Part shown: one piece after another, positions 43,298-56,164 of the stretch
Layout: every line of letters begins with the position of its first letter
Numbering within the stretch: the first letter of the stretch is position 1
NCBI GenBank assembly: GCA_047495785.1
Contig: JBLDXI010000013.1
Span: forward strand, 2,480,001 to 2,544,000
Direction: 5' to 3'
Length of the DNA stretch: 64,000 bases
Origin: Lepidodermella squamata
Taxonomy: Eukaryota > Animalia > Gastrotricha
Made by a program: the position numbers and the translations under genes
The notes under the pieces: generated by a model
What the model was told of the DNA's origin: nothing
The model's input: the letters and a program-made list of their open reading frames with translations, nothing else
Databases searched by the model: none

Positions 43298-45622
43298 ATG
43301 AATTTTATTTACGTTGCTGCCCTTTTGTTGGCGGTTGGCTACGTGAAAGCCGCGGAACGTACCCTAATCTTGGTCGACAACTGGGGTATTCGTGAAACCC
43401 ATTCTCAATACTTCAAATTTCTGAAAGGTACGAGATTTCACATATATTTTATGAATATTCATGAAACGTAAAATTAAATGATGGTTGTGAACAATCTCTG
43501 AATGCTCTTATGATTACGAACTTTATATTATGCTGATAAATCTAAAGTTTTGCACCTTTTTCCATAATTATTTTCGCTCTGCTAAGAAGTTTTTTGTCTT
43601 ATCAGATTCTGGCTTCGAACTGACCTTCAAGACTGCTGATGACAAGTCGATCAATTTGTTCAAGTACGGCGAGCGCAGCTACGACCACCTCATCCTGTTC
43701 TGCCCCTCAGTCCAGGAATTCGGCAATTCGCTGACCGTCCAAGATCTGTCTGCCTTCGTTGACCAGGGTGGCAACGTGATCGTTGGCGCAAATTCTCAAA
43801 TCGAAGATCAAATTCGCGAGTTCGGTTCTGAATGCGGTGTCGAATTCGATGAAGGCAAGACCGCTGTTATCGATCATTTGTCCTACTCGCTGCCGACCAC
43901 CACCGGAACTTCGATCCCTGACGATGGCCGCCACACCCTGGTTGTCGCTGAATCGAACCAGCTCATCAACTCTGACCTCATTGTCGGCAAACCGAGCGGC
44001 GCTCCTCTCCTCTACCGAGGCGTTGGTTTGGTCGCTGATAGCGAAAATCCTCTCGTCTACCCGGTTCTCCGCGCTTCAGCCACCTCTTACTCGTACAATC
44101 CCGACCAGGTAATTTTCTAGTTGGATTAAATTTATGTTTGAGGTGTTTTAACGATGAGTTGAACAATCTTTGATAAAACGATGATTTCTAAAAATGTCTG
44201 ATCTGAAAAACTACAAAAAATTATTCATGAAAAACAAGTTTTAAGGGTCGAGTTTTTAATTTTGAAATTTCGCTTTTTTCAGGCCATCTCTGATTTCCCG
44301 CTCGGTGTTGGCAAGAACATGCTCCTGATTGCTGCCCTCCAGGCTCGTAACAACGCCCGCGTCGTTCTGTCCGGCTCCATTGAATTTTTCTCGGACGCTT
44401 TCTTCGCTAGCTCGGTCCACAAATCCGGCGACGTTAAAACGTAATTTTTTGTTGCAATTATCATATTTTTGCTATACCTATTTACATGATGGTTGTGAAC
44501 AATCTCTGATCGTAGAATTGATTACGAACTTTTAAAAATTCTGATAAATTATTAAATTATTGCAAATTTGAGGAAGTTTTCAACCGGAAATGATAGAAAT
44601 ATTATATATTTTTCAGCCACGAGAAGTCTGGCAATGAGCAAGTTGCCAGGTCTGTCACCATGTGGGCCTTCAAGCAGTCCGGTGTTCTTCGTTACGGAAA
44701 CGTCCATCACCACCTAGTCACCGAGAAGACCACCCCGAAGGAGTACACGATCAACGACGACGTCGAATATACCATCGATATCGAACGCCTGGTTGACGGA
44801 AAATGGTCTCCCCTCGAAGCCACCGATGTCCAGCTCGAGTTCATCCGCATCGACCCGTTTGTCCGCACCGTTCTGAAGCGCAACGGCAAGACCTTCTCGG
44901 CTCGTTTCAAGCTGCCTGACGTTTATGGCGTGTTCAAATTCTCGGTCGAATACAACCGCGTCGGCTACACGTTCCTCAACTCAGTTACTCAGGTTAGTTG
45001 CATGAAAAAACGCCACGTGATGCTGTACTTTGCCCTCATAAATGCGTGTTTTTTCTTTCACGTGAATGGAATACATATCATTCAGAAAAAAGTGCTGTGG
45101 CTTTCTAGAATAAATACTCTATTCTTATCAGACCAAGTCCAGTGTTTGCTCAAGGCTAGCATAATTAAGCGTATAATCTAGTTGATTGTTTCAGAATGTT
45201 AGGTTCGCCATGATTTGTGGCTTATTTTTCAAGGCGTAGTTATCACACAATTAAAAATTAGTCGCGTGCCTTTGTGGCGCAGCTTCTTCAACAAAAAATG
45301 TACTCGTCCTAGTTCAAGACAGCATTATGTAATTCATCCTAACCTTTTAAAAGGGAGGAACCTCGTGCGGTATATTCAGTTATCATTTAAGGTATTCAAT
45401 TTTAGTAGTAGTAGTAGCAATAGCTCATTCACCGCATTTATATTATTTCATACTATTTTATAGGTGTCGGTCCGCCCGTTCACGCATCTGCAGTATGAGC
45501 GCTTCATTCCATGCGCCTACCCGTACTACGCATCGGCATTCTCCATGATGGGCGGTGTTGTTCTGCTCTCCCTGGTTTTCCTGCACTACCGCGAACCGAC
45601 GGCCAAGCCGAAAGCCGAGTAA
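43298..45622 (+). CDS. DDOST: Oligosaccharyltransferase 48 kDa subunit (exons 43298-43427, 43606-44108, 44283-44440, 44617-44992, 45464-45622)
   Basis: Signal peptide, [77 protein letters not shown] end. Confidence 0.96.
43472..43541 (+). ncRNA. Box C/D snoRNA, copy 1 (DDOST intron 1)
   Basis: C box ATGATGG 43478, guide GTGAACAATCT, D' CTGA 43498, C' ATGATT, D CTGA 43533. The guide is complementary to conserved 28S GGAUUGUUCAC. Confidence 0.85.
44145..44211 (+). ncRNA. Box C/D snoRNA, divergent dual-guide copy (DDOST intron 2)
   Basis: Terminal stem GTTTT/AAAAC, C-like ACGATGA, guide TGAACAATCT + D' TTGA, second guide AAATGTCTGA(T) + D CTGA 44203. Confidence 0.8.
44480..44549 (+). ncRNA. 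Box C/D snoRNA, copy 3 (DDOST intron 3)
   Basis: Stem ATTTA/TAAAT, C box 44486, ATGATGGTTGTGAACAATCTCTGA identical to copy 1, shared TGATTACGAACTTT, D CTGA 44541. Confidence 0.85.
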
Positions 45623-45925
45623 AAGCTCGCAGTGCAGTTTATTGTGTAACTACTAGTTTCATTACATGCGCGAAGACGATGCTTCATGAAAAACTTTTTT
45701 CCCGTCGATGAGCGCTTTTATGCTATTATGGTGAATATTCGGTTGGTGTCTGAATGTGTTATTATTATTATTATGTTCCGGGTTGTGCTCTAACGCATGC
45801 TTTATCTTGTCGATTGCCAAAAATTTTCGTTTGTGAAACAAACTAAACTGCTGTGACAACAATGAAACGAAAAATTTGAGTTGTGGAATTTCAAGGAGGA
45901 TTTTTCATTTCATAGTGCGTTAAAA

Positions 45926-47360
45926 ATGGCTGAGGCTTACGTTACTCTGGCAACGAATGATTCGTACGCATTCGGAGCTGCTACCCTGGCTGCTTCATTG
46001 CGCCGAACTGGAACCACCCGCGCCATTGTCTGCCTGGTAACGACGGGCGTTTCGCCGTTGATGCGCGTTTGCCTCGAGCGATTTTTCGACCGACTGGTCT
46101 ACGTCGATGTTTTCGACTCGAAAGACGCGGCCAATCTAGCTCTCCTCGGCCGCCCTGAGCTCGGATGCACGTTCACGAAATTGTCGTGCTGGCGCTTGAC
46201 TGACTATCAGAAAGCTGTCTTCCTCGATGCCGACACCCTGGTGCTAACAAACATTGACGACCTCTTCCAGCGCGAGGAATTATCCGCCTCTCCTGACCTC
46301 GGTTGGCCCGATTGTTTCAACTCGGGCGTGTTTGTCTTCAAGCCCAGTGAGACGACGTACCAGAAGTTGGTCGAATTCGCCGCGAGCCATGGTAGCTTCG
46401 ACGGTGGTGACCAGGGTCTGCTGAACTCGTTTTTCGGCGACTGGGCCCACACTGACATCGGCCGCCACCTGCCGTACGTCTACAACACGGCGTTCATGGC
46501 CGCCCCGTACAGCTACTTGCCGGCTCTGAAGCACTTCTTCACGAATCTGAAGGTGATTCACTTTTTGGGCGCGCTCAAGCCTTGGTTGTTGCCGACGGAT
46601 GCGAGTGGCAACCCGCTCATTCCGCCCAATCTTGACATGCACGAGTACTCGAAGAAACTCGTCAGTGCATGGTGGGATGTCTACAACGTTGACGTCAAGC
46701 ACCGCCTAGCCGAGGTTTGTCTCTAAAAAATGTTTCATTTCATCCAGAAATTTTACATTTCATTACTTGAATTCATGATTAGACATATCCAGCCACAAAG
46801 GTAAAGAGGGCTATTTGTAGTGACGTCTTTTGCTTGCATGGCTATTAAATTTGCATTTTTGAAGGTGGACTTTTTTTAGCTTGAATTAATTTTAGCAATA
46901 ATATCCCGACTAATTTTGCTTGCTTTTGCTTGTATGATATAATTCCTTTGTTAATTGTCAGTTTCATTTCCAGGGCGTCCAAATCAGCAGCAGCACGGAA
47001 GGATCGGTTTTCAGCGCCGCTGCTCAGGGTCACGCTCTATCGCCCGAGGAAGAGGATCGTCTGCACCGTGCCGCGTGGGAATCCGGCTATGTTGAATTCG
47101 GCGGTCGCGACTCTTTCCACAACATCAAGTCTCACATTGACACGGTCATGGCGAAACCAGGCCCGGCCCCGACTTCGCGCCCGACCTCGGCGACCGCCGC
47201 AGCACCGGCTGCCGCTGCTGCGCCGAAGCCGGCGGCAGCTGCTCCTGCGGCCGCGAAACCAACTACCGCTGCCCCTGCCGCAAAACCGACGACCGCTGCT
47301 CCTGCGACAAAACCGACGTCCGCTGCACCTGCTAAGCCGGCCGATCCCAAGAAGAAATAA
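45926..47360 (+). CDS. GYG1: Glycogenin (exons 45926-46714, possible microexon 46783-46800, 46973-47360)
   Basis: AYVTLATNDSY, RPELGCTFTKL, FLDADT, GWPDCFNSG, SFDGGDQGLLN, YSYLPA (autoglucosylated Tyr), glycogen-synthase-binding WESGYVEFGGRDSFHNIKSHID. Confidence 0.95.
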
Positions 47361-49492
47361 ATAAAGCCACACCGAAATTCGAAAATAATTGAATCGAACT
47401 TGGTCGCATAAAACCAAAGAAAACTTGAATGTTGAAAATTATGTTATGATTAAAATATATATGATATAATATAAATGTGCATCCCGTGAGATATATTTAT
47501 GAGAAGAGCTGAGTAAAATTTGCTCGGAACATCATGGGGGTGTTTGGCTGGTCATGAATCACCGAGCAAATGATTTATTACTACAAAGATATTGTTGTTC
47601 CCGTGTATTTTTTCATTAAAAAATTTGTCCGGTAGCAGTTTTCTTGAAAACTCTAAACCCGTGTCGTTCTTCCAAGCTCTTAACCGTTGCTTTGCTGCAT
47701 CGAAAAAGTGCACTGTTGAAACCAATCCCGGTACATTGGTCACTGCTATGCTGTCTCAAACTAGCTCAAGCAAAATTAGTGAGTGACATTATTTACTGTA
47801 AAATCTTGTACGACTCATTTGAAATTGATGGTTGGTTTTTGTTTTGTTTATCAATAAAGCGCTTTTCTCAAGTATTATATGTCGATGGAAAAATTATGAT
47901 GAAACCTGGTGGATCATTATTGCTTTCCAATGTTCTGTACCTCCTGCGACCTACGCCAAAAATACCTGTTACTTGTGCCTACTCGTAGTAATGATATTCC
48001 GCCATATGGAATCAACGACTTAGACGCTTCATAAAATTGAATGAAAATCTGAATTGCCCCGTTTCTATGAAATCATTGCATTGGCACTTGGAAAATAAAC
48101 TATGCAACGTAACAACGCGTGTTGGTTTGTTTTGATAAAACGCAGTTGAAGAAAAATTCAAGAAGGAAGCTGAAGGCATGTGACATGCGGACGGATACAG
48201 AACCAAACCGGTTTTTTGCCCGAAAACATCGCGGAGAAGATTATCGCTTTCGATTTATCATTATTTTTATTTTTAATGCAGAGGTCGCTCTCAGTATTTG
48301 AATATTCGTATTCCAAGGCTCAGGCAAAAAATCACGTGGCGTCACATGTTCGTCCGTCACGTGACTGAAGGAATCGGAATTTGTATGAAAAAAATTAAGA
48401 CGTGGGCTGTGATTCAAGCCCTTATGCCCACTTACCAAGGGCCCGAATCGATTGCCGCGTCTCAAAGGAGGAGGACGAGCTAGCAGTCTTTGAGACGGAA
48501 GACAGAAAATAAAGTATTTTCACATGCCAGCTCGGCTTTGGAGGTAGATGTTCGCCGTCTTTGCATTTTACGCTTCGACTGCCAAGTTTTCAAGCGAGCT
48601 TATTTTGTCCGTAAAGAGTTTTGCGTGAAATGGCTTTTCGTCATTTTCTGACTGGGATCAATTTTTTGATGAAGCAGATGGGCTTTTCAGGACTTGGCCG
48701 TTGATGCATCGCCACACCTGTATCCCCAGATGGACATGGCGTTTCTCCTCATATCAGTTTCGCAATTCGCAATTCGCAATTCGCAATTCAGTTCGTTTCG
48801 CATTAAATTTATACTGGCAGTTCTTCCAGCTTTTATTACGTAGTCACATGACTTGGGTAAATTATCAACATAGAGAAATATTTTTTAGCTGCAGCGCCTA
48901 GTTGTGCAATTTTGTTTCATGATAACATCTTTTTTATTCTTTTAGGTTTCAAACTCAGCGCATCGATGGTTGACAACAAGGCAGCGTGCAATGAAGGTAA
49001 TTATCTGCAAAAGTTGAGCACACTTTAAATTATTTGTGTGCTCGGCTATGCTCATCTAGGCTAGGTTGACAAATCTACGTGTTCAGCCCTATAACCTGAC
49101 GGGCGGTGGAAATAACCTCAGTAATTGCGTCCTGACGGCCGATTCGTGTTTAATAGCTCGTTAGAAATGTTCGAAGCGTTTTTTTGCTCGAGTTATTTGC
49201 GTGGGTATAACCATCATGCGACGCTGGAAGAGCTGTAACAAAAAACGATGGAGCCTGTTAAAACGGCGTTGTTTCTTGTTTCTCTCCGCCGTCTAATTAT
49301 AGCCCGAGAGTGCGCGAATATTCACTGCCGCCGTACACAAGCGGGTTAATGTAAGCTAGTTTGATGACAATGCAACGCAGTCTTATTAATATGAAGAGAT
49401 AATAAAAAATACAGCTAAATAATTGAAGTAGAGTATTGTAAAATATTTCGAGCCGGAATAAATTCTTGCTTTAAAAGCGTCTGCGAATTATA

Positions 49493-51540
49493 ATGGCGGC
49501 GATGGTTGACAGACGGCAGTGCGCGGTATGCCTAAAAATTTTGAAATTTCACTGAGTGATTTTTCGAGTCTATTAGGTGTGTCATCGTGATCTTACAGAG
49601 GAGGACAGCGATCATGCGATCAACCTTGTGGTTGACACATCAGCCAGCTCTTCAAATTCGAAGACATCGGAAGAAACGTATTCGCAAATAGTCTGCACGC
49701 CGTGCAAGGTGAGAATCATTTTTTTCATGTCTCCCTATTCTAAAACTGTAATACCAACGAAATAGAAATTTTACGATCGGATAAAATTTACGGATAGAGA
49801 ATTGCCGGCAGAATCGAGTCAATGTGACCACACCGGGACAATCGATGGGTGTGAAAGTTGCCGGGCTCAGCTTTGCCACCGCTTTCTGTCAGAAATCGCG
49901 TGTCACAAGCCACCGCCAGCTGCTCCGAGAACCCTGCCCGTTAACGTTGATCAGGGAACTGTGAATGTTAGCGTCAAGTTGCTCCCATGCGAGGTCTGCG
50001 GGGCATCGAGCAGTGGGTAAGATTTCCCAGGAATCTTCTACTTCGAATCCGACTGATGTTTTTACTGTTCAGGTATCATTTTGGTGCAATGACTTGCGAG
50101 GGCTGCAAGACATTTTATCGGCGAGCTGTTGGTCGTGGTTTAACTTGCTGTTTCTCGGCAAGAGCCGCCGAGGTTTTGACCCACCGGGAGAAGATTGAAA
50201 AGTGCAAGCATTGCCGTATGGAGGCTTGCATCAAACTTGGAATGTCCATTACACGATCGCGTCGAGGTCGCCCCTCGTCATCCTTCCGAGCTACCACGTC
50301 CCAATACGTCAAAAGCTTGTACGAAAGCAATAAACTGTTAGTCGAACCTCTTAGCAGGAAGGACGTTGCTTTACCGCAATACGCTGACGCGCCAACTTCG
50401 CCGTTTGAAGACAATTCAAACACCACAGCAACCCCAATTTCGCTCTCAGTCGATGCATCATGGAGCACCTCTGCGCCTGTTTTTCCCCAATCCCAGGCAG
50501 ATGACAGCCAACAACCGGTGAGCCTCAGCATTCAGCGGCCTAAAGTTCCTGTTAAAACTTCGGCTAGATCGCAAGATTTTCCATCGCCATCGGGCAGTAA
50601 TAAAGCTGAATCTATTTCAAGCAAATCTTTCTCTACTGAGGAAAGTCTTGCTCCGATGGAAACAGAATCAGCCAACGAGCGGGTTGAGACTGAGCGCCAT
50701 GTTGCAGACAAGTTGCGAAAATCAGCGATAAGTAACGCGGGACTGCCGATTGGGCGATCTGATCTTCACATAAGCATTGGAGCAGACATCAAGCATGTCC
50801 ATCGAATGGAAGCCAAAGAATTTCTCCTCGCTGTCAGTGATGCCGGGAAATACTTGCGGGGAATTCCCAATGCTCCCAGCGTTCGATTAACCGCGGACAT
50901 GTCACTTACTGCGATATGGCAAAACATCCTGCTTCATAACATTGAGCCTAATGTAATGGTTACCTCGGCGTTTGCAAGGAATCTGCCCGGTTTCAACGAG
51001 TTAACCCCGCGTGATCAGCAAAAGCTGTTCGCCTTCTCTTATTTCTCAATTCTTGTCGCGGTTTTAGGATACGAGTACGCTCAGCAGGATGAACCTAAAT
51101 ACATCAGTGCATTCGCTCTGAACGAAGTTCGTCCGCTACAAATTTTTCAAGCGAAATTCCAAGCCATAGCCGCCTTGACGCAGGAAAAAATTGCGGAAAC
51201 CGGTGCTAAATTGAGCCACTGGGGCCTGTCGTCTATGGAGCTATATCTGCTATGCGGCTCATTGTTTTTCAACCAAAATTTGGTAGGTTTGGAAGACCCG
51301 GCTTGCGTCGCCCGACTGGCGGATTGTTATCAGAAGGCATTCACGGAAGTTTGCCAATCACGCTTTTTCAGCGGGCTGGACGATATCAACCTGTACGATA
51401 TGACCTCGTTCTTCAAAAGATCGATAGCACCTGATTTTCTTTCCCTGACACAATGGCTGGCGACACATTTCCCTGAGCTAGTGAACATTGGTTGTTATTG
51501 GTCTGATATAAGCCAAGTCCTGATGAGTTTGATAACGTAA
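49493..51540 (+). CDS. Nuclear hormone receptor with two tandem DNA-binding domains and a ligand-binding domain (exons 49493-49525, 49577-49708, 49766-50016, 50073-51540)
   Basis: Introns of 51, 57 and 56 nt give one frame: CA|VC...CTPCK|KFYDRI...CESCRAQLC (DBD1); CEVCGASSSG|YHFGAMTCEGCKTFYRR...CKHCRMEACIKLGM (DBD2); LBD signature FARNLPGFNELTPRDQ. Confidence 0.85.
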
Positions 51541-51829
51541 AGAATTAGCATCCGCTCGGCGCACTCATTATAATATGCTCGTTGCCAATTGCAAATGTGC
51601 TATTCTTACGTGTTTAAGGGTCCTTTATTTATGCAAAATAACTGTTCCTCTCATCCCTTTGTTCTCATAGACTCATATAGACATGCTTCGCGCGTCTGCT
51701 TGTGCTTTTCGGGAATCTGTTATACGTTGATTGCATCAACGGCTTGAATAAAAGATTTTACTCCTGGGGACATCCATTAGTGTTTTCACTACGAAGTGCA
51801 TTAGCGTCTCGTGTTTGTCTAAAGCCAGG

Positions 51830-53640
51830 TTAAGATTTGAATAGCAAACGGCGCTTCAACTCCATTTTGATAGCGTTCCGATCTACATTTCCGCGCTGCA
51901 ACATGCTGAAGTTCTCCTGAGCCCTCCTCGCCAGAAAAGGCAACGCAGCCGACAGCGTGCCATACGCAACAGATTGATACACAAAGTAGCCGTGACTTGC
52001 CAACCATTCCGATATGTAGTCCGTAAACCCCCAAGTTTGGCCGAACATTGCCACATCGGGGCGCTCGCGATACAGCTTTTCATGCTTATTCAAAGCTTGG
52101 CTTATAGTCGCCCAATTATGTGTTGCGGTGATTATTGCTCCGGAATCTGTCGAGTTGAAGCTGTCCAACATTTTCAGCAGAATTTTGTCGTAGTTTTTAT
52201 TGGTCCCTTCGTAATTTTCCCAAACAGGCGAAGGCTGTCCGTTTGCTGTAGCCATGGCTCTTTCACTGTCCATGTAAGCTCCTCGAACCAGCTTCAGAGC
52301 GAATTTTGCACCATTTTCCTGGCAGAACTTCAAATCACAATCTGCCCGCCCTTCGGTTTTCTGATTTTAAAAAACAGGAGTAAGTAGCCAAATTAATGGG
52401 TAGATGACTAAACCGTCAAGTAGGCTTGATATGTTCCAAAAATCCAAGCTTTTTGCTTATTGGCGTGTTGCATCATACCAACAGCTAGCATCTATTGACG
52501 AAAACGAAGTTCCGAATGCCTTGGGTTTTTTTAGATAAGGTGATACCAAAATTGCAGGATTCATGCAGTCGAGCTCCCCATCGACAAAAAGCCGAACTTT
52601 GTTTTGCTCTACTACCTGAAATGATTCACTCATCAGTAATCTTCTCCGGCAATGAAATTAAGGTTACTTTTGCCACTTTGCCAAGCGCTTTTAAAGCGCC
52701 GCAGAACTCGCTGATATCAGAAGGCGGTAAAGCTCCAAGTTTAGCCTGGAAAAGCAATTATGGGTCGTTAAAACACGCCCTGAAAGCTTACCAAATGCTC
52801 GGAAAGTTGACGATCGGAATCAGGTGCTATCATGGATGATGAAACCAGTTTATACAATATCTCTTTCTCTTGTGGCTTAATTCTCTCCAGCGCTGATGTC
52901 AGGTGGACCAAAGCTACCGGCTGAAAATCGGCAGATAATATACTTATGAATCATATGAGAGAAGAGCTACCTTAACAAAAGCTGAAATCCGGAATTGACT
53001 AGCAGTTTCGTTCCCAATATCTCGAACCAAGTTGAGAAGTTCGACGAATTTTTCCGCGTTCAGATCGAACATAACCCTTATAAACAGGTAATAGAAGCAG
53101 TTTCTTTTTGAAAATGTTTGTGACTAGTTACTTTTCGTCCGTATCTAGGCCCGTCTCGTCCACCATTAGCAGCATCATATGAAGGCCTTTAGTCTTCATT
53201 GCCGCGGCTGTTTTGCGAATGCTATCAGGGTTTTCGCCGCAAACGAATTGGTTGTAGAAGGTGTGTCGCATCAATGCATCAAATAACTTATTTCCAATGA
53301 TTTTCGGACCAGATTTAATCAGCTAGAAGAATTCAGCTAACGGCTGTTGGTGGGAAAATTTAGGGAAATTACTGTTTCACTGTTTTTGGCGATATATTTC
53401 TGCGAAGAGGCCTTCAATATCGCGTAAGATCGCAACAATTCCGCTGTGCTTTTCTAGATTAGATCGGAAAATAGGCAGTTATCGGATTCTCGAGATCATT
53501 CAAACCTTTGAGAATGAACTCAGCCGCTTCTCCATGGAAATATCTGGGCTAACTTGAACTTGAGTAGCCAAGCAAGCTTTCCGCAAAGCTCCATTCGAGG
53601 AGCGAACAGTCAGCCTGAGAGCAGTTGATGTGAATAACAT
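51830..53640 (-). CDS. Mitochondrial proline/hydroxyproline dehydrogenase (PRODH2-like), multi-exon
   Basis: Mitochondrial-type presequence MLFTSTALRLTVRSS, SK|KSTAELLRSY, RLFVDGE, KLVRGAYM, ATHN, FGQ..G..D, RRAQEN. Confidence 0.9.
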
Positions 53641-54395
53641 TTTCCCCGCAAACAAATGAAGTCCTAAATTGTTATTTCAACTCTCACCTTCAATTCAGCC
53701 GCAACTCACGCTATCATTTTACGTTTCGGGAGAAGTAAGCAGACCGTGAAGCTGTTTTCCCGCTGAAATTTATGCACTGGTTTGGTTGTAATTTTTAGCT
53801 TTTTGGTCTCGGGAGGCCCATCTCAATGCCTGTCAAAAACGTTAATCAGGCCACCTGAACCAGCAACAAAAGGCTCGTCCCTTTTGGGACTTCACCTCCA
53901 TCCAACAATAGCCCGATATTGCGATAGATTTGTTTCCTTTATTCTCGCTTTTTCTTATAAAAATGATGGCGCATTTTAATACAGGTTACCTTTTTTCATC
54001 TCACAAAAGCCAGGCACAATAGAAACAATAATGGTCAGTATATTATGCGAAAAACAAACCGCCTTGGCCCTCGCGAGTGCACCTTGTTGGCGTTAAAAAT
54101 ATGCAATAATAATACAGTAAAAACGTTAAAGCATAACTTTATACGAGAGAGGCTGCAAAATGGAAATACGCACGTTTAGAGAGATTGCAAATACATAGAT
54201 GAAGTAGGTCAAACGGCAAAGACTTAAAGCAAACAATGACAACAGTTTAAAAGTAACACCTGAACGTTTCTCACAATCAAATATTACGCACGGGTTCAAA
54301 TTGTAACTGGAGTGTGGAAGCTGCAGTAATAAAAATAATACGCCGCTAAAATATTTAAACTTCTCAAACAAAATAACGCGATTGTCTTCATAGAT

Positions 54396-55366
54396 TTACG
54401 ACGACGAGACTTGCTTGTACTGAGGCTGAGAAATGTGAGACAGTTCGACTTCTTCCTTCGAGGCGACGGCCGAGCGTTTTCGAGTCGTGTCCTCGGTTCC
54501 GGTTGTGTAACTTCGGGAGGGTGAAGATCCTGACGTTAAAGGCACAGTTTCGGCTTCTTCTTTCCCTGAATAGCGTTTCTCATAAACGATATAATCACGA
54601 AGCAACAGCCCAGCAGCACCGAGGAACAAAACGAATGCAATCACGCAAAGAATAATTATTTCCTAAAAAAAATTAATAAAAATCTGTAATTCAGCCTTAA
54701 AATTTGACAAACCTTAGTATAATGATCCGGGACGTAGATAAAAAATCGCCAAGTGTGCATGTTCGTTCCGTTACCGCAGGCGTAAGTTATTCCCGAATGG
54801 CTCATGTTGAGATTGAGGATGATCAAATTCTGAGATTCAACGTCGGTTGTGATATCCGTGTAATAGGCTGCATCGCCCGATGATTTCGGCAGTTTCAAGG
54901 CAACGAAATTCGAGCTGTTACAAGAATCTGATGTGCATTTAAACCATGAGTAAGTCGACATATCGCCGTCATCAAGGCGACCAGCACAGTCTAGCACGAC
55001 ATCGATGCCCTGTTGAACGATGACCGAAGTTTGAGAAATCGAGATATTAGGGAAACCTTCTTGAGCGTCTTCTGGAATAATGCCAACCGAGTCCAGAAAA
55101 TAGCACGTTCGGTTTGTGTACTGTGCAGGGTCGACTGCTGCTTGTGAATTGATGTAAACTGACGGTTTCAGTGGGTAACAATCATCTTTGTGGGGTCTCA
55201 GCGCATCGACAACATATAAGTTTGAGCCAGTTGCACCGATATCGTAATCAGGGTTGTCTCTCAACGCAGCTAATGGAACACCAGTCAAACTTGATCCTCC
55301 TTCTTGAGCGAAGACGATGCACTTCAGGAGAAAAGCTGAGCACAAGACAACGAGGACGTTGTTCAT
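54396..55366 (-). CDS. Type I membrane protein with one Ig domain (exons 55366-54713, 54662-54396)
   Basis: Signal peptide MNNVLVVLCSAFLLKCIVFA; Ig motif VVLDC...YSWFK...LIILNL...GITYAC; TM IIILCVIAFVLFLGAAGLLL; YEKR juxtamembrane. Confidence 0.8.
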
Positions 55367-55567
55367 TCCAGTAATAAGAGATCTAAACAATTAAAAGCGC
55401 AAATGTTTGAAGGCAAGAAATAATTCATTTGATGAATACATATAAATAAAATAATAAAACCAGCAAATATTAGTCTAAACAAATCAAAACTCGAGAATCG
55501 ATAGCGTCTTGGTCCAACCACAGCAATTATTCTCAAATAAATTTACTCGCTAAAATAAATTCGATTC

Positions 55568-56164
55568 TCAAATGATAACAACAGGTGATAGCCGAGAACA
55601 TACGTTAGATGAGTATACAGCTCTAACTGCTAGATGGTAGCACCCGTCTGGTTTAACAGGAGCAAGGGTAGCGCCCATATTACCGTTATCTACAGGCGTC
55701 ACGGAAGCAATACGATGCCATCTGGACTTGATACACTGCTGTTTAGCTGGAGATTTGTTGAATGGTACAAATAATGCATAAATTTCGAACTGTTTAAGCA
55801 TCGGCTTTTTGCATGATGCAAGCCCTGGCACGCCCCATAGAATATAAATGGCATGCGAATGGTCTTGGAAAATTCTTTCGCCCAGAGTTATCAGAGGTAC
55901 TGGCAGTTTCGGATTGATAGCACCCGGAGGCTCGATATTGGCTAATGAAGTAGATGAAGATGATGAAGGACTATTTTGTATTGGATTCTTGGCAGCTTTG
56001 TACTTTGTGACAGCGGCTTTTAGTCTGGCCATATTCAAAGACAAATCCCTACTTGCTTGAGCGGCGGGAGTTTGACTGAGAAATTCGTCGCAGCATGTGG
56101 CAGAAAAACTTGATATTACGCATGGAAGTTTCTCCGGGGTGATAGTGAATGCCACCCGCCGCAT
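55568..56164 (-). CDS. Small protein consisting essentially of an ATF7IP/MCAF/Windei-type C-terminal FN3 domain
   Basis: IYILW..FEIYA..WHRIASV..MGATL..YHLAVRA parallels ATF7IP GIVLSW..YHLYA..WKKIGEV..MACTL..YYFAVRA. The start is uncertain; ATG 56164 follows a splice acceptor. Confidence 0.7.
   Translation of the reverse strand: MRRVAFTITPEKLPCVISSFSATCCDEFLSQTPAAQASRDLSLNMARLKAAVTKYKAAKNPIQNSPSSSSSTSLANIEPPGAINPKLPVPLITLGERIFQDHSHAIYILWGVPGLASCKKPMLKQFEIYALFVPFNKSPAKQQCIKSRWHRIASVTPVDNGNMGATLAPVKPDGCYHLAVRAVYSSNVCSRLSPVVII

What the first reader, a model, noticed from the sequence alone, without database searches (positions are those of the whole stretch)
49493..50280. Two-DBD nuclear receptor with a novel-looking first P-box (CTPCKK) and remodelled zinc fingers
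Seen: three small exons, split across separate ORFs in the track, encode a first DBD: CAVC-x~38-CTPCKKFYDR...CDHTGTIDGCESCRAQLC. It precedes a second DBD CEVC-x13-CEGCKTFYRR...CCFSARAAEVLTHREKIEKCKHCR. Established: 2DBD-NRs are known from flatworms and other spiralians, typically with P-boxes CEACKK then CEGCKG. Here KK is retained but EA>TP and G>T, finger 1 has a ~25-aa insertion, and both second fingers lack normal D-box Cys spacing (possible His ligands). Inference: a divergent 2DBD receptor with altered or lost DBD1 specificity.
Basis: partly seen in the sequence, partly recalled or inferred. Interest (0 to 1): 0.75.

Follow-up and report, generated by a model that had tools for sequence, protein, structure and literature searches.

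The report
Divergent two-DBD nuclear receptor gene
This is a real, expressed gene for a hormone-receptor-type gene switch that carries, in front of its normal DNA-binding module, a second one that has been heavily rebuilt; it belongs to a fast-evolving, unpublished offshoot of the rare 'two-DBD' receptors that this scan has already met elsewhere in the same genome.

Summary
Four exons on the + strand (49493-51540) encode a receptor of about 627 aa: remodelled DBD1, a 36-aa linker, DBD2, a long hinge and an LBD. RNA contigs carry the splice joints 49708/49766 and 50016/50073. The joint 49525/49577 has no RNA proof. It is supported because a syntenic relative on a metagenome scaffold (L002) has the same tiny first exon, the same intron splitting the first C-x|x-C, and the same intron right after the P-box (CK|KF).

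DBD1 escapes Pfam in exon-wise searches. It keeps C-x2-C, C-x2-C-K-K-F-Y-x-R and C-x2-C-R-x3-C in the canonical order. Composition-preserving shuffles never reproduced these motifs. Finger I has a 37-residue loop where 13 is normal. Finger II reads C-x-H-x6-C-x2-C where relatives have C-x-C.

DBD2 matches zf-C4 (E 1.3e-10) with an odd finger II (CC-x17-C-x2-C). The LBD folds confidently as a nuclear-receptor LBD.

Outside its own small clade, the closest relatives are canonical 2DBD-NRA receptors.

Verdict: this is a new variant of a known kind. The scan has already reported similar remodelled two-DBD receptors on other DNA of this genome. Zinc binding and DNA binding by DBD1 are untested. I did not build or search the joined spliced protein.

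The parts
49476..49477 (+). Candidate acceptor AG for spliced-leader trans-splicing, 15 nt before the start codon
   Evidence: Inference only. A pyrimidine-rich stretch followed by AG is read. An earlier scan note (s1-407664) reports acceptors just before start codons in this genome. The relative L002 has TAG 3 nt before its ATG. No leader was seen in the reads here.
49493..49525 (+). Exon 1: MAAMVDRRQCA, holding the start codon and the first Cys of DBD1
   Evidence: The donor is GTATGC at 49526. L002 has the same design: METTCR followed by a GT donor. The joint to exon 2 was not seen in RNA.
49526..49576 (+). Intron 1, 51 nt, GT..AG, splitting the first CxxC as C-A|V-C
   Evidence: The in-frame TAG at 49574-49576 closes the exon 2 frame upstream, so exon 2 has to be spliced in. 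L002 has a 56-nt intron at the same place. Some X1 contigs hold intron letters 49523-49562.
49577..49708 (+). Exon 2: second Cys of the CxxC, a 37-residue acidic and Ser-rich finger-I loop, and the P-box CTPCK
   Evidence: The end of the exon aligns to positions 15-25 of the canonical DBD1 profile. BLASTP against L002 exon 2 gives E 0.004. Pfam gives no hit.
49709..49765 (+). Intron 2, 57 nt, phase 0, lying between CK and KF of the recognition helix
   Evidence: A loose end in RNA run X1 reads the spliced joint GCACGCCGTGCAAG|AAATTTTACGATCGG. An intron lies at the same place in L002, L003, L007 and L008.
49766..50016 (+). Exon 3: KFYDR, then DBD1 finger II (C-D-H-x6-C-E-S-C-R-A-Q-L-C), a 36-aa Pro-rich linker, and the first CEVC of DBD2
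   Evidence: Finger II aligns to canonical DBD1 profile positions 43-66 and to finger II of P0002 (BLASTP E 7e-4). Pfam and PDB give no hit.
50017..50072 (+). Intron 3, 56 nt, phase 2, inside finger I of DBD2
   Evidence: Loose ends in RNA run X1 read GCATCGAGCAGTGG|GTATCATTTTGGTG.
50073..51540 (+). Exon 4: the rest of DBD2 (CEGCKTFYRR, CC-x17-CKHC, GM), the hinge, the LBD and the stop codon
   Evidence: Pfam zf-C4 E 1.3e-10 and Hormone_recep E 1e-4 (22.3 bits, below the 23.5 cut-off). PDB sequence search: RAR beta at 4.3e-11. X1 RNA contigs cover the exon.
49985..50244 (+). DBD2, interrupted by intron 3: canonical finger I (C-x2-C-x13-C-x2-C); finger II lacks Cys6
   Evidence: It scores 50 bits against a profile of second DBDs of canonical two-DBD receptors.
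50821..51537 (+). Ligand-binding domain
   Evidence: AlphaFold2 with a 22-row alignment gives pLDDT 90.9 and pTM 0.90. Foldseek against PDB returns TR, RXR, ROR and PPAR LBDs at TM 0.6-0.77. The signature FARNLPGFNELTPRDQQKLF aligns to RAR/RXR. The AF-2 helix YWSDISQVL is present.

Best explanation
This is a protein-coding gene of the two-DBD nuclear receptor lineage (NR subfamily 7, nearest the 2DBD-NRA group). It sits in a small, fast-evolving clade whose zinc fingers have been rebuilt.

Shown: the protein is DBD1, a 36-aa linker, DBD2, a hinge of about 190 aa, then the LBD, with almost no A/B region.

Inferred mechanism:
- DBD2 is the main DNA reader. Its finger I and recognition helix (CEGCK-T-FYRR) are canonical, so it most likely reads an AGGTCA-type half-site. 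The basic tail after GM (RSRRGRP) may add minor-groove contacts.
- DBD2's finger II has no normal D-box (CC-x17-C-x2-C), so the usual DBD-DBD dimer contact on DNA is probably lost.
- DBD1 is translated and most likely still folds around two zinc ions. Site I would be four Cys around a 37-residue floppy acidic loop. Site II would be a Cys-His-Cys-Cys site (C-x-H-x6-C-x2-C).
- DBD1 keeps the backbone-contacting Lys-Lys, Phe-Tyr and Arg of the recognition helix. The base-reading P-box residues are T-P here and differ in every relative. Its sequence specificity is therefore changed or relaxed. It probably serves as an auxiliary, lower-specificity DNA or partner contact tethered to DBD2, not as a second canonical half-site reader.
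- The LBD has the full helical sandwich with an AF-2 helix, so ligand or cofactor control of transcription is expected.
For: - Gene model: the sequence, two of three splice joints in RNA, and all introns conserved in the syntenic relative L002. That relative is the window's sister in the tree at 100/96.
- DBD1 is more than chance: motif shuffles gave 0 of 1e6, and both exons align co-linearly, though weakly, to a profile of 43 canonical first DBDs.
- DBD1 is conserved in kind across the clade. L002, L003, L007, L008 and P0006 all show C..C[KR] then KF[FYHC]xR, then C-x-C, then C..CR...C. All but P0006 have the intron before KF.
- Two-DBD kinship: 59 of 153 stored proteins, nearly all from the top 150 hits for exon 4, have two or more P-boxes, mostly CEACKK then CEGCKG. 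In an LBD-only search, the best non-clade hits are canonical 2DBD-NRA proteins P0129 and P0010 at about 5e-13. The careful tree joins the clade to 2DBD_A at 97/85.
- DBD2 and LBD.
- Purifying selection: a second haplotype over the LBD differs in 15 codons, 10 of them synonymously.
- Precedent for His in finger II of a working receptor: the CHC2 motif of flatworm HR96b (PMC8363021). The layout C-x-H-x8/9-C-x2-C also occurs in the single DBD of P0002 and P0044.
Against: - No Pfam or PDB hit for DBD1 searched exon by exon, and none for the first DBD of the relatives.
- BLASTP of exon 3 against the L002 counterpart is not significant.
- The exon 1-2 joint is not seen in RNA, and intron-1 letters occur in RNA contigs.
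- RNA depth over exons 1-2 is about a third of that over exons 3-4.
- Compared with L002 and L003, one Cys of finger II is missing here, replaced by Ser.
- The single-sequence AlphaFold2 model of exon 3 is useless (pLDDT 47.7).
- The AU test does not reject a tree with the clade outside groups A and B (p 0.148).
- No zinc or DNA binding data exist.
Confidence: 0.8

Rival explanations
1. DBD1 is a decaying relic. It is translated as an N-terminal extension but no longer folds around zinc or touches DNA, so the protein works as a one-DBD receptor.
For: - Pfam and PDB are blind to it.
- A finger-II Cys kept in L002 and L003 is Ser here.
- The base-reading P-box residues differ in every relative.
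- The 37-residue acidic loop replaces the GxHYG hairpin.
Against: - Seven of the eight canonical ligand positions hold Cys, and a His lies two residues after the remaining finger-II Cys.
- KKFYxR and CxxCRxxxC are kept across relatives whose other residues have diverged beyond BLAST detection. That is the pattern expected under selection on the zinc core.
- The frame is open through 128 codons, and the introns are conserved.
Confidence: 0.2
2. The main product lacks DBD1. Most transcripts start or are trans-spliced downstream, and exons 1-2 belong to a minor isoform or an untranslated leader.
For: - X1 depth is about 2-6 over 49.0-49.8 kb against 14-28 over exons 3-4.
- Intron-1 letters are present in X1 contigs.
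- The exon 1-2 joint was not seen.
Against: - Exon 3 has no in-frame ATG, yet it holds the first CxxC of DBD2. A transcript starting there could not make a complete DBD2.
- The exon 2-3 joint is in RNA.
- Oligo-dT SMART libraries lose 5' ends.
- The ortholog keeps exon 1 and its intron.
Confidence: 0.1
3. The two-DBD layout arose independently in this lineage by duplication of a DBD exon. It would not be inherited from the ancestral 2DBD-NR, much as the nematode 2DBD-NRC group stands apart.
For: - The AU test does not reject a placement outside groups A and B.
- The branches are long.
- The linker is longer (36 aa) than the published 17-22 aa.
Against: - The first P-box keeps the Lys-Lys that is diagnostic of 2DBD-NRA; P0006 and L007 in the same clade still read CEACKK and CEACRK.
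- The LBD's best non-clade hits are 2DBD-NRA proteins.
- The careful tree joins the clade to 2DBD_A at 97/85.
- The canonical DBD1 profile fits exon 2 and exon 3 slightly better than the DBD2 profile does.
Confidence: 0.1

Closest known systems
2DBD-NRA (NR7A) receptors of flatworms, rotifers, molluscs and annelids (Wu et al. 2007, PMC1810520; Wu and LoVerde 2023, PMC10497141)
   Same: The architecture is DBD-DBD-hinge-LBD. The first P-box ends in Lys-Lys followed by F-F/Y-x-R. The second P-box is CEGCK. Their LBDs are the best non-clade matches, and the ML tree joins the clade to them.
   Different: - The published members have canonical C-x2-C-x13-C-x2-C and C-x5-C-x9-C-x2-C in both DBDs, with 17-22 aa between them.
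- Here finger I of DBD1 has a 37-residue loop, and both second fingers lack the C-x5-C D-box.
- The P-boxes read CTPCKK and CEGCKT, and the linker is 36 aa.
- Pfam does not see DBD1.
- Gastrotricha are not in the published catalogue.
2DBD-NRB receptors, with P-P module CLPCKS then CEGCKK (PMC10497141)
   Same: Proline at the third P-box position of the first DBD.
   Different: Group B has Ser, not Lys, after CK. In the tree it does not group with this clade.
CHC2 zinc finger of parasitic flatworm HR96b, also called Vitellogenic Factor 1 (PMC8363021)
   Same: A His stands where a finger-II Cys ligand is expected, in a receptor that also has a long insertion in its DBD. That receptor is functional.
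   Different: It belongs to a different subfamily (NR1J), has a single DBD, and the His sits in a D-box of normal length (C-x6-H...). Here the D-box is shrunk to C-x-H.
Remodelled two-DBD receptor arrays reported by this scan elsewhere in the same genome (s1-379641, s1-430038, s1-368300, s1-422653)
   Same: The same kind of gene: a stretched first DBD in front of a normal one, small introns, and expression.
   Different: Those are tandem arrays. This is a single gene with a positional ortholog in a related species. I could not read those windows, so their sequence relationship to this gene is untested.
Nematode 2DBD-NRC group (PMC10497141)
   Same: A highly divergent, variable P-P module.
   Different: It comes from a different phylum. 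No member was identified among the hits here.

Membership tests
Nuclear receptor superfamily | A zf-C4 DNA-binding domain (Pfam PF00105) | tested here: met
   The DBD2 part in exon 4 gives E 1.3e-10, 42 bits against a cut-off of 21.1. PDB receptors match at up to 4.3e-11.
Nuclear receptor superfamily | A ligand-binding domain with the helical-sandwich fold | tested here: met
   Pfam Hormone_recep scores 22.3 bits, just under the 23.5 cut-off. The AlphaFold2 model has pLDDT 90.9 and matches TR, RXR, ROR and PPAR LBDs at TM 0.6-0.77.
2DBD-NR (NR subfamily 7) | Two zf-C4 DBDs in tandem before one LBD | tested here: inconclusive
   The second DBD is clear. The first shows the ordered motifs CxxC, CxxCKKFYxR and CxxCRxxxC and aligns weakly to a first-DBD profile. 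It gives no Pfam or PDB hit exon by exon. The joined domain was not searched.
2DBD-NR (NR subfamily 7) | P-P module CEACKK then CEGCKG (group A), or CLPCKS then CEGCKK (group B) | tested here: not met
   Here it is CTPCKK then CEGCKT. Four of six and five of six residues match the group A module. Clade relatives read CSACKK, CGACKK, CEACRK and CEACKK.
2DBD-NR (NR subfamily 7) | Canonical Cys spacing in both DBDs (C-x2-C-x13-C-x2-C and C-x5-C-x9-C-x2-C) | tested here: not met
   DBD1 is C-x2-C-x37-C-x2-C and C-x-H-x6-C-x2-C. DBD2 has a canonical finger I, but finger II is CC-x17-C-x2-C.
2DBD-NR (NR subfamily 7) | 17-22 residues between the two DBDs | tested here: not met
   36 residues lie between the C of CRAQLC and CEVC; about 31 counted from the position equivalent to GM.
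2DBD-NR (NR subfamily 7) | Phylogenetic grouping with known two-DBD receptors | tested here: met
   The careful ML tree of DBD2 plus LBD joins the clade to 2DBD_A at 97/85. The LBD-only ranking agrees. Caveat: the AU test does not reject a placement outside groups A and B (p 0.148), and the tree has no defined outgroup.
CHC2-type finger II (flatworm HR96b) | A His as zinc ligand in place of a finger-II Cys | not testable with these tools
   The sequence shows C-D-H where relatives have C-x-C. Testing zinc coordination needs protein chemistry or a solved structure.

The most novel reading that the evidence does not exclude
The clade is a third, undescribed branch of two-DBD receptors in which both second fingers have given up the D-box. 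DBD1 would then have become a new kind of zinc module: a Cys4 site carrying a long acidic loop, plus a Cys3His site. It would either read a half-site different from DBD2's, or act as an intramolecular DNA mimic that gates DBD2. One polypeptide would do what canonical receptors need a dimer for.
Probability: 0.2. Interest if true: 0.65.

Novelty: new variant of a known kind. Interest (0 to 1): 0.45.

Why it matters
Almost nothing is known functionally about two-DBD receptors, and the published catalogue describes both of their DBDs as canonical with few exceptions. This gene and its relatives show that the first DBD can be rebuilt drastically. The changes are a 24-residue loop insertion, a collapsed D-box and a Cys-to-His change, while the zinc ligands and the Lys-Lys-Phe-Tyr-x-Arg helix are kept. 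That gives a natural series for asking which parts of a receptor DBD are needed for zinc binding and which for DNA reading. It also extends the class to a phylum absent from the catalogue, if the earlier identification as a gastrotrich holds. As a single gene it adds one more member to what this scan has already seen in arrays in the same genome. Its particular value is the positional ortholog, which allows a like-for-like comparison.

Tried and rejected
- Pfam on exons 2 and 3 separately: no family at E up to 10.
- phmmer of exon 3 against PDB: only chance hits.
- ESM Atlas features for exon 3: no usable hit.
- AlphaFold2 of exon 3 alone: pLDDT 47.7, not interpretable, so no fold search was run on it.
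- Word-index protein search with exon 4: only three weak hits. The exhaustive HMMER search was needed to find relatives.
- The search of earlier findings by sequence: blank.
- The supplement of PMC10497141 was searched for CTPCKK, CSACKK and CGACKK and gave nothing. The positive control CEACKK was not found either, so this says nothing.
- BLASTP of exon 3 against its L002 counterpart: not significant.
- The sigma-70 promoter and terminator scan is irrelevant for a eukaryotic gene.
- A DBD-only tree of 181 rows was too short (66 columns) to resolve deep branches.
- Reading DBD1 as a chance Cys cluster or an untranslated leader is rejected by the shuffles, the open frame, the RNA joint and the ortholog.
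No Pfam scan, profile search or structure prediction of the whole DBD1, or of the whole protein, was run.
Full report
**What is in the sequence.** On the + strand, four exons separated by introns of 51, 57 and 56 nt give one open frame.
- Exon 1 (49493-49525) reads MAAMVDRRQCA.
- Exon 2 (49577-49708) reads VC, then 37 mostly acidic and Ser-rich residues, then CTPCK.
- Exon 3 (49766-50016) reads KFYDRIKFTDRELPAESSQCDHTGTIDGCESCRAQLC, then a Pro-rich linker, then KLLPCEVCGASSS.
- Exon 4 (50073-51540) continues with G|YHFGAMTCEGCKTFYRR...CCFSARAAEVLTHREKIEKCKHCRMEACIKLGM, a Ser/Thr/Pro-rich hinge and a C-terminal domain.

I never joined the exons in any tool or script, so nothing here rests on a search or fold of the whole first DBD.

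**Is the gene model real?** Run X1 is RNA: its loose ends include a SMART adaptor and poly(A) tails. Its contigs carry the exact spliced joints 49708/49766 and 50016/50073, and they cover exon 4.

The joint 49525/49577 was not seen. The only record there is a fold-back contig that contains intron-1 letters, so some unspliced RNA or DNA is present. Depth over exons 1-2 is about a third of that over exons 3-4.

Three further facts support exon 1.
- The frame of exon 2 is closed just upstream by the TAG that forms its acceptor.
- Exons 2 and 3 contain no in-frame Met, although exon 3 holds the first CxxC of the undisputed DBD2.
- The nearest relative has the same layout.

That relative turned up when exon 4 was run through the exhaustive HMMER search. 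The second-best hit, P0005, is a prokaryote-style ORF call on a 27-kb eukaryotic metagenome scaffold (L002). tblastx shows that L002 is syntenic with window 44.0-56.1 kb. OST48 is 72-84% identical, a GT8 glycosyltransferase is 81% identical over 266 aa, and two further genes match. The receptor itself is only about 32% identical in the LBD, and it is inverted relative to its flanks.

Upstream of the P0005 ORF, L002 reads as follows: ATG GAA ACA ACC TGC AGG|gtatat (METTCR), a 56-nt intron, then GTG TGT...TGC AGT GCA TGC AAG|gt (VC-x30-CSACK), a 48-nt intron, then KFFRRVRSLESGLLVRECSC...CRPCRARRC running on into its second DBD. The split of the first CxxC (C-x|x-C), the long finger-I loop and the phase-0 intron between CK and KF are therefore all conserved.

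The same CK|KF (or CR|KF) intron and the same module order are readable in three more environmental loci, L003, L007 and L008. They appear without the intron in P0006.

**Is DBD1 more than chance, and is it a zf-C4 derivative?** Exon by exon, Pfam and a PDB sequence search see nothing. Pfam also misses the first DBD of the relatives.

A profile built from the first DBDs of 43 canonical two-DBD receptors found here aligns the two exons co-linearly. The end of exon 2 falls on the Cys3-Cys4-Lys positions, and exon 3 falls on the Cys6...Cys7-x2-Cys8-Arg...Cys positions. The scores are weak: 155 of 3000 shuffles reached the exon 2 score and 24 of 3000 reached the exon 3 score.

The a-priori receptor motifs are far rarer in composition-preserving shuffles.
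- 'C..CK' at the exon 2 end: 1.4e-4.
- '.F[FY].R' at the exon 3 start: 3.7e-4.
- 'C..CR...C': 2.2e-3.
- Each exon's pair of motifs together: 0 of 1,000,000.

In the alignment with relatives, L002 and L003 have C18-x-C20 after KF. This gene has S18-Q-C20-D-H22, followed after six residues by C-E-S-C-R-A-Q-L-C.

Finger II of DBD1 thus has three Cys and a nearby His. The layout C-x-H-x8/9-C-x2-C recurs in the single DBD of the environmental receptors P0002 and P0044. His in finger II is published for the functional flatworm HR96b as the CHC2 motif (PMC8363021). A Cys3His site is therefore plausible, but it is inferred.

**DBD2 and LBD.** The exon 4 part of DBD2 matches zf-C4 at E 1.3e-10 and RAR/RXR/COUP structures at 1e-9 to 1e-11. 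Finger I, completed by CEVC in exon 3, has canonical spacing. Finger II has two adjacent Cys two to three residues before the usual Cys5 position and no Cys6 (CC-x17-C-x2-C). The closest relatives likewise lack Cys6.

The C-terminal 253 residues, folded with a 22-row alignment, give pLDDT 90.9. They match TR, RXR, ROR and PPAR ligand-binding domains at TM 0.6-0.77. The H3-H5 signature and an AF-2-like last helix are present, the latter with Asp where relatives have Glu.

A second haplotype in DNA run X2, partly present in RNA too, differs over 51039-51193 in 15 codons, 10 of them synonymously. This fits purifying selection.

**Family.** Of the 153 proteins stored, almost all from the exon 4 search, 59 have two or more P-boxes, mostly CEACKK...CEGCKG. 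A few are CLPCKS...CEGCKK.

With the LBD alone, the ranking is the small clade first (P0005, P0004, P0007, P0008), then the canonical 2DBD-NRA proteins P0129 and P0010 at about 5e-13, then P0006 and P0009, then mostly further 2DBD-NRA proteins.

A careful ML tree of DBD2 plus LBD (69 rows, 389 columns) gives these groupings.
- The window is sister to L002 at 100/96.
- The clade of eight (window, L002, L003, L008, L009, P0006, P0009, P0044) has support 100/100.
- The clade joins 2DBD_A at 97/85.

The AU test does not reject a tree with the clade held outside groups A and B (p 0.148), and branches are long. The tree favours membership but does not prove it. The retained first module with its Lys-Lys P-box is the stronger argument.

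Against the published definition (PMC1810520 and PMC10497141), the gene fails three features: the exact P-P module, the canonical Cys spacing and the 17-22 aa linker. I therefore file it as a new variant within the kind, not as a standard member.

**How it most likely works.** Shown: an expressed receptor gene encoding DBD1, linker, DBD2, hinge and LBD.

Inferred from established receptor biology:
- DBD2, with a canonical finger I and CEGCK helix, reads an AGGTCA-type half-site.
- Loss of the D-box in both second fingers removes the usual dimer contact.
- DBD1 keeps the structural and phosphate-contacting residues, but its base-reading P-box residues vary from relative to relative (T-P, S-A, G-A, E-A). 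It carries an acidic 37-residue loop where canonical receptors have the GxHYG hairpin.
- It is more likely an auxiliary, altered-specificity or partner-binding zinc module than a second canonical reader.

My estimates are about 0.7 that DBD1 still binds zinc and about 0.35 that it still reads DNA sequence.

**Context.** Earlier notes of this scan call the genome a gastrotrich with spliced-leader trans-splicing. They report large arrays of two-DBD receptors with remodelled first DBDs, a C-x-H finger-II family and a one-DBD offshoot on other pieces of it. I did not test the organism assignment. The kind of finding is therefore not new to the scan. I found no paper on gastrotrich nuclear receptors, and the phylum is absent from the 2023 catalogue.

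Noticed in passing
window 51039-51193: DNA run X2 holds a second haplotype or near-copy of the LBD at about equal depth. It has 16 differences in 15 codons, 10 synonymous and 5 not. Part of it is also in RNA run X1.
   Followed up: partly
L002 1-9257 against window 44000-56150: A metagenome scaffold is syntenic with the window (OST48, a GT8 glycosyltransferase and two other genes, at 55-84% aa identity). The receptor is inverted relative to its flanks and only about 32% identical. The proline dehydrogenase gene at window 51.8-52.3 kb (- strand) has no counterpart on the scaffold.
   Followed up: partly
P0002 (L001 383-1510) and P0044: These environmental single-DBD receptors have a finger II that reads C-x-H-x8/9-C-x2-C with no Cys6. 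This is the same layout as finger II of DBD1 here and as the family in note s1-391734.
   Followed up: partly
window 49135-49802: RNA run X1 shows six low-depth contigs with 'opposite strands' joints 60-160 nt apart. They are most likely fold-back artefacts of the cDNA library or of assembly. They also show weak transcription from about 49030, upstream of the start codon.
   Followed up: no
window 47088-48115: The upstream + strand gene ends with a poly(A) tail after 48115 in RNA run X1. About 1.4 kb of intergenic DNA separates it from the receptor, so the two are probably not one operon.
   Followed up: no
L003 3435-3497: The scaffold carrying P0004 has a run of N inside what looks like the finger-I loop exon of its first DBD. 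The start of that relative's DBD1 cannot be read.
   Followed up: no
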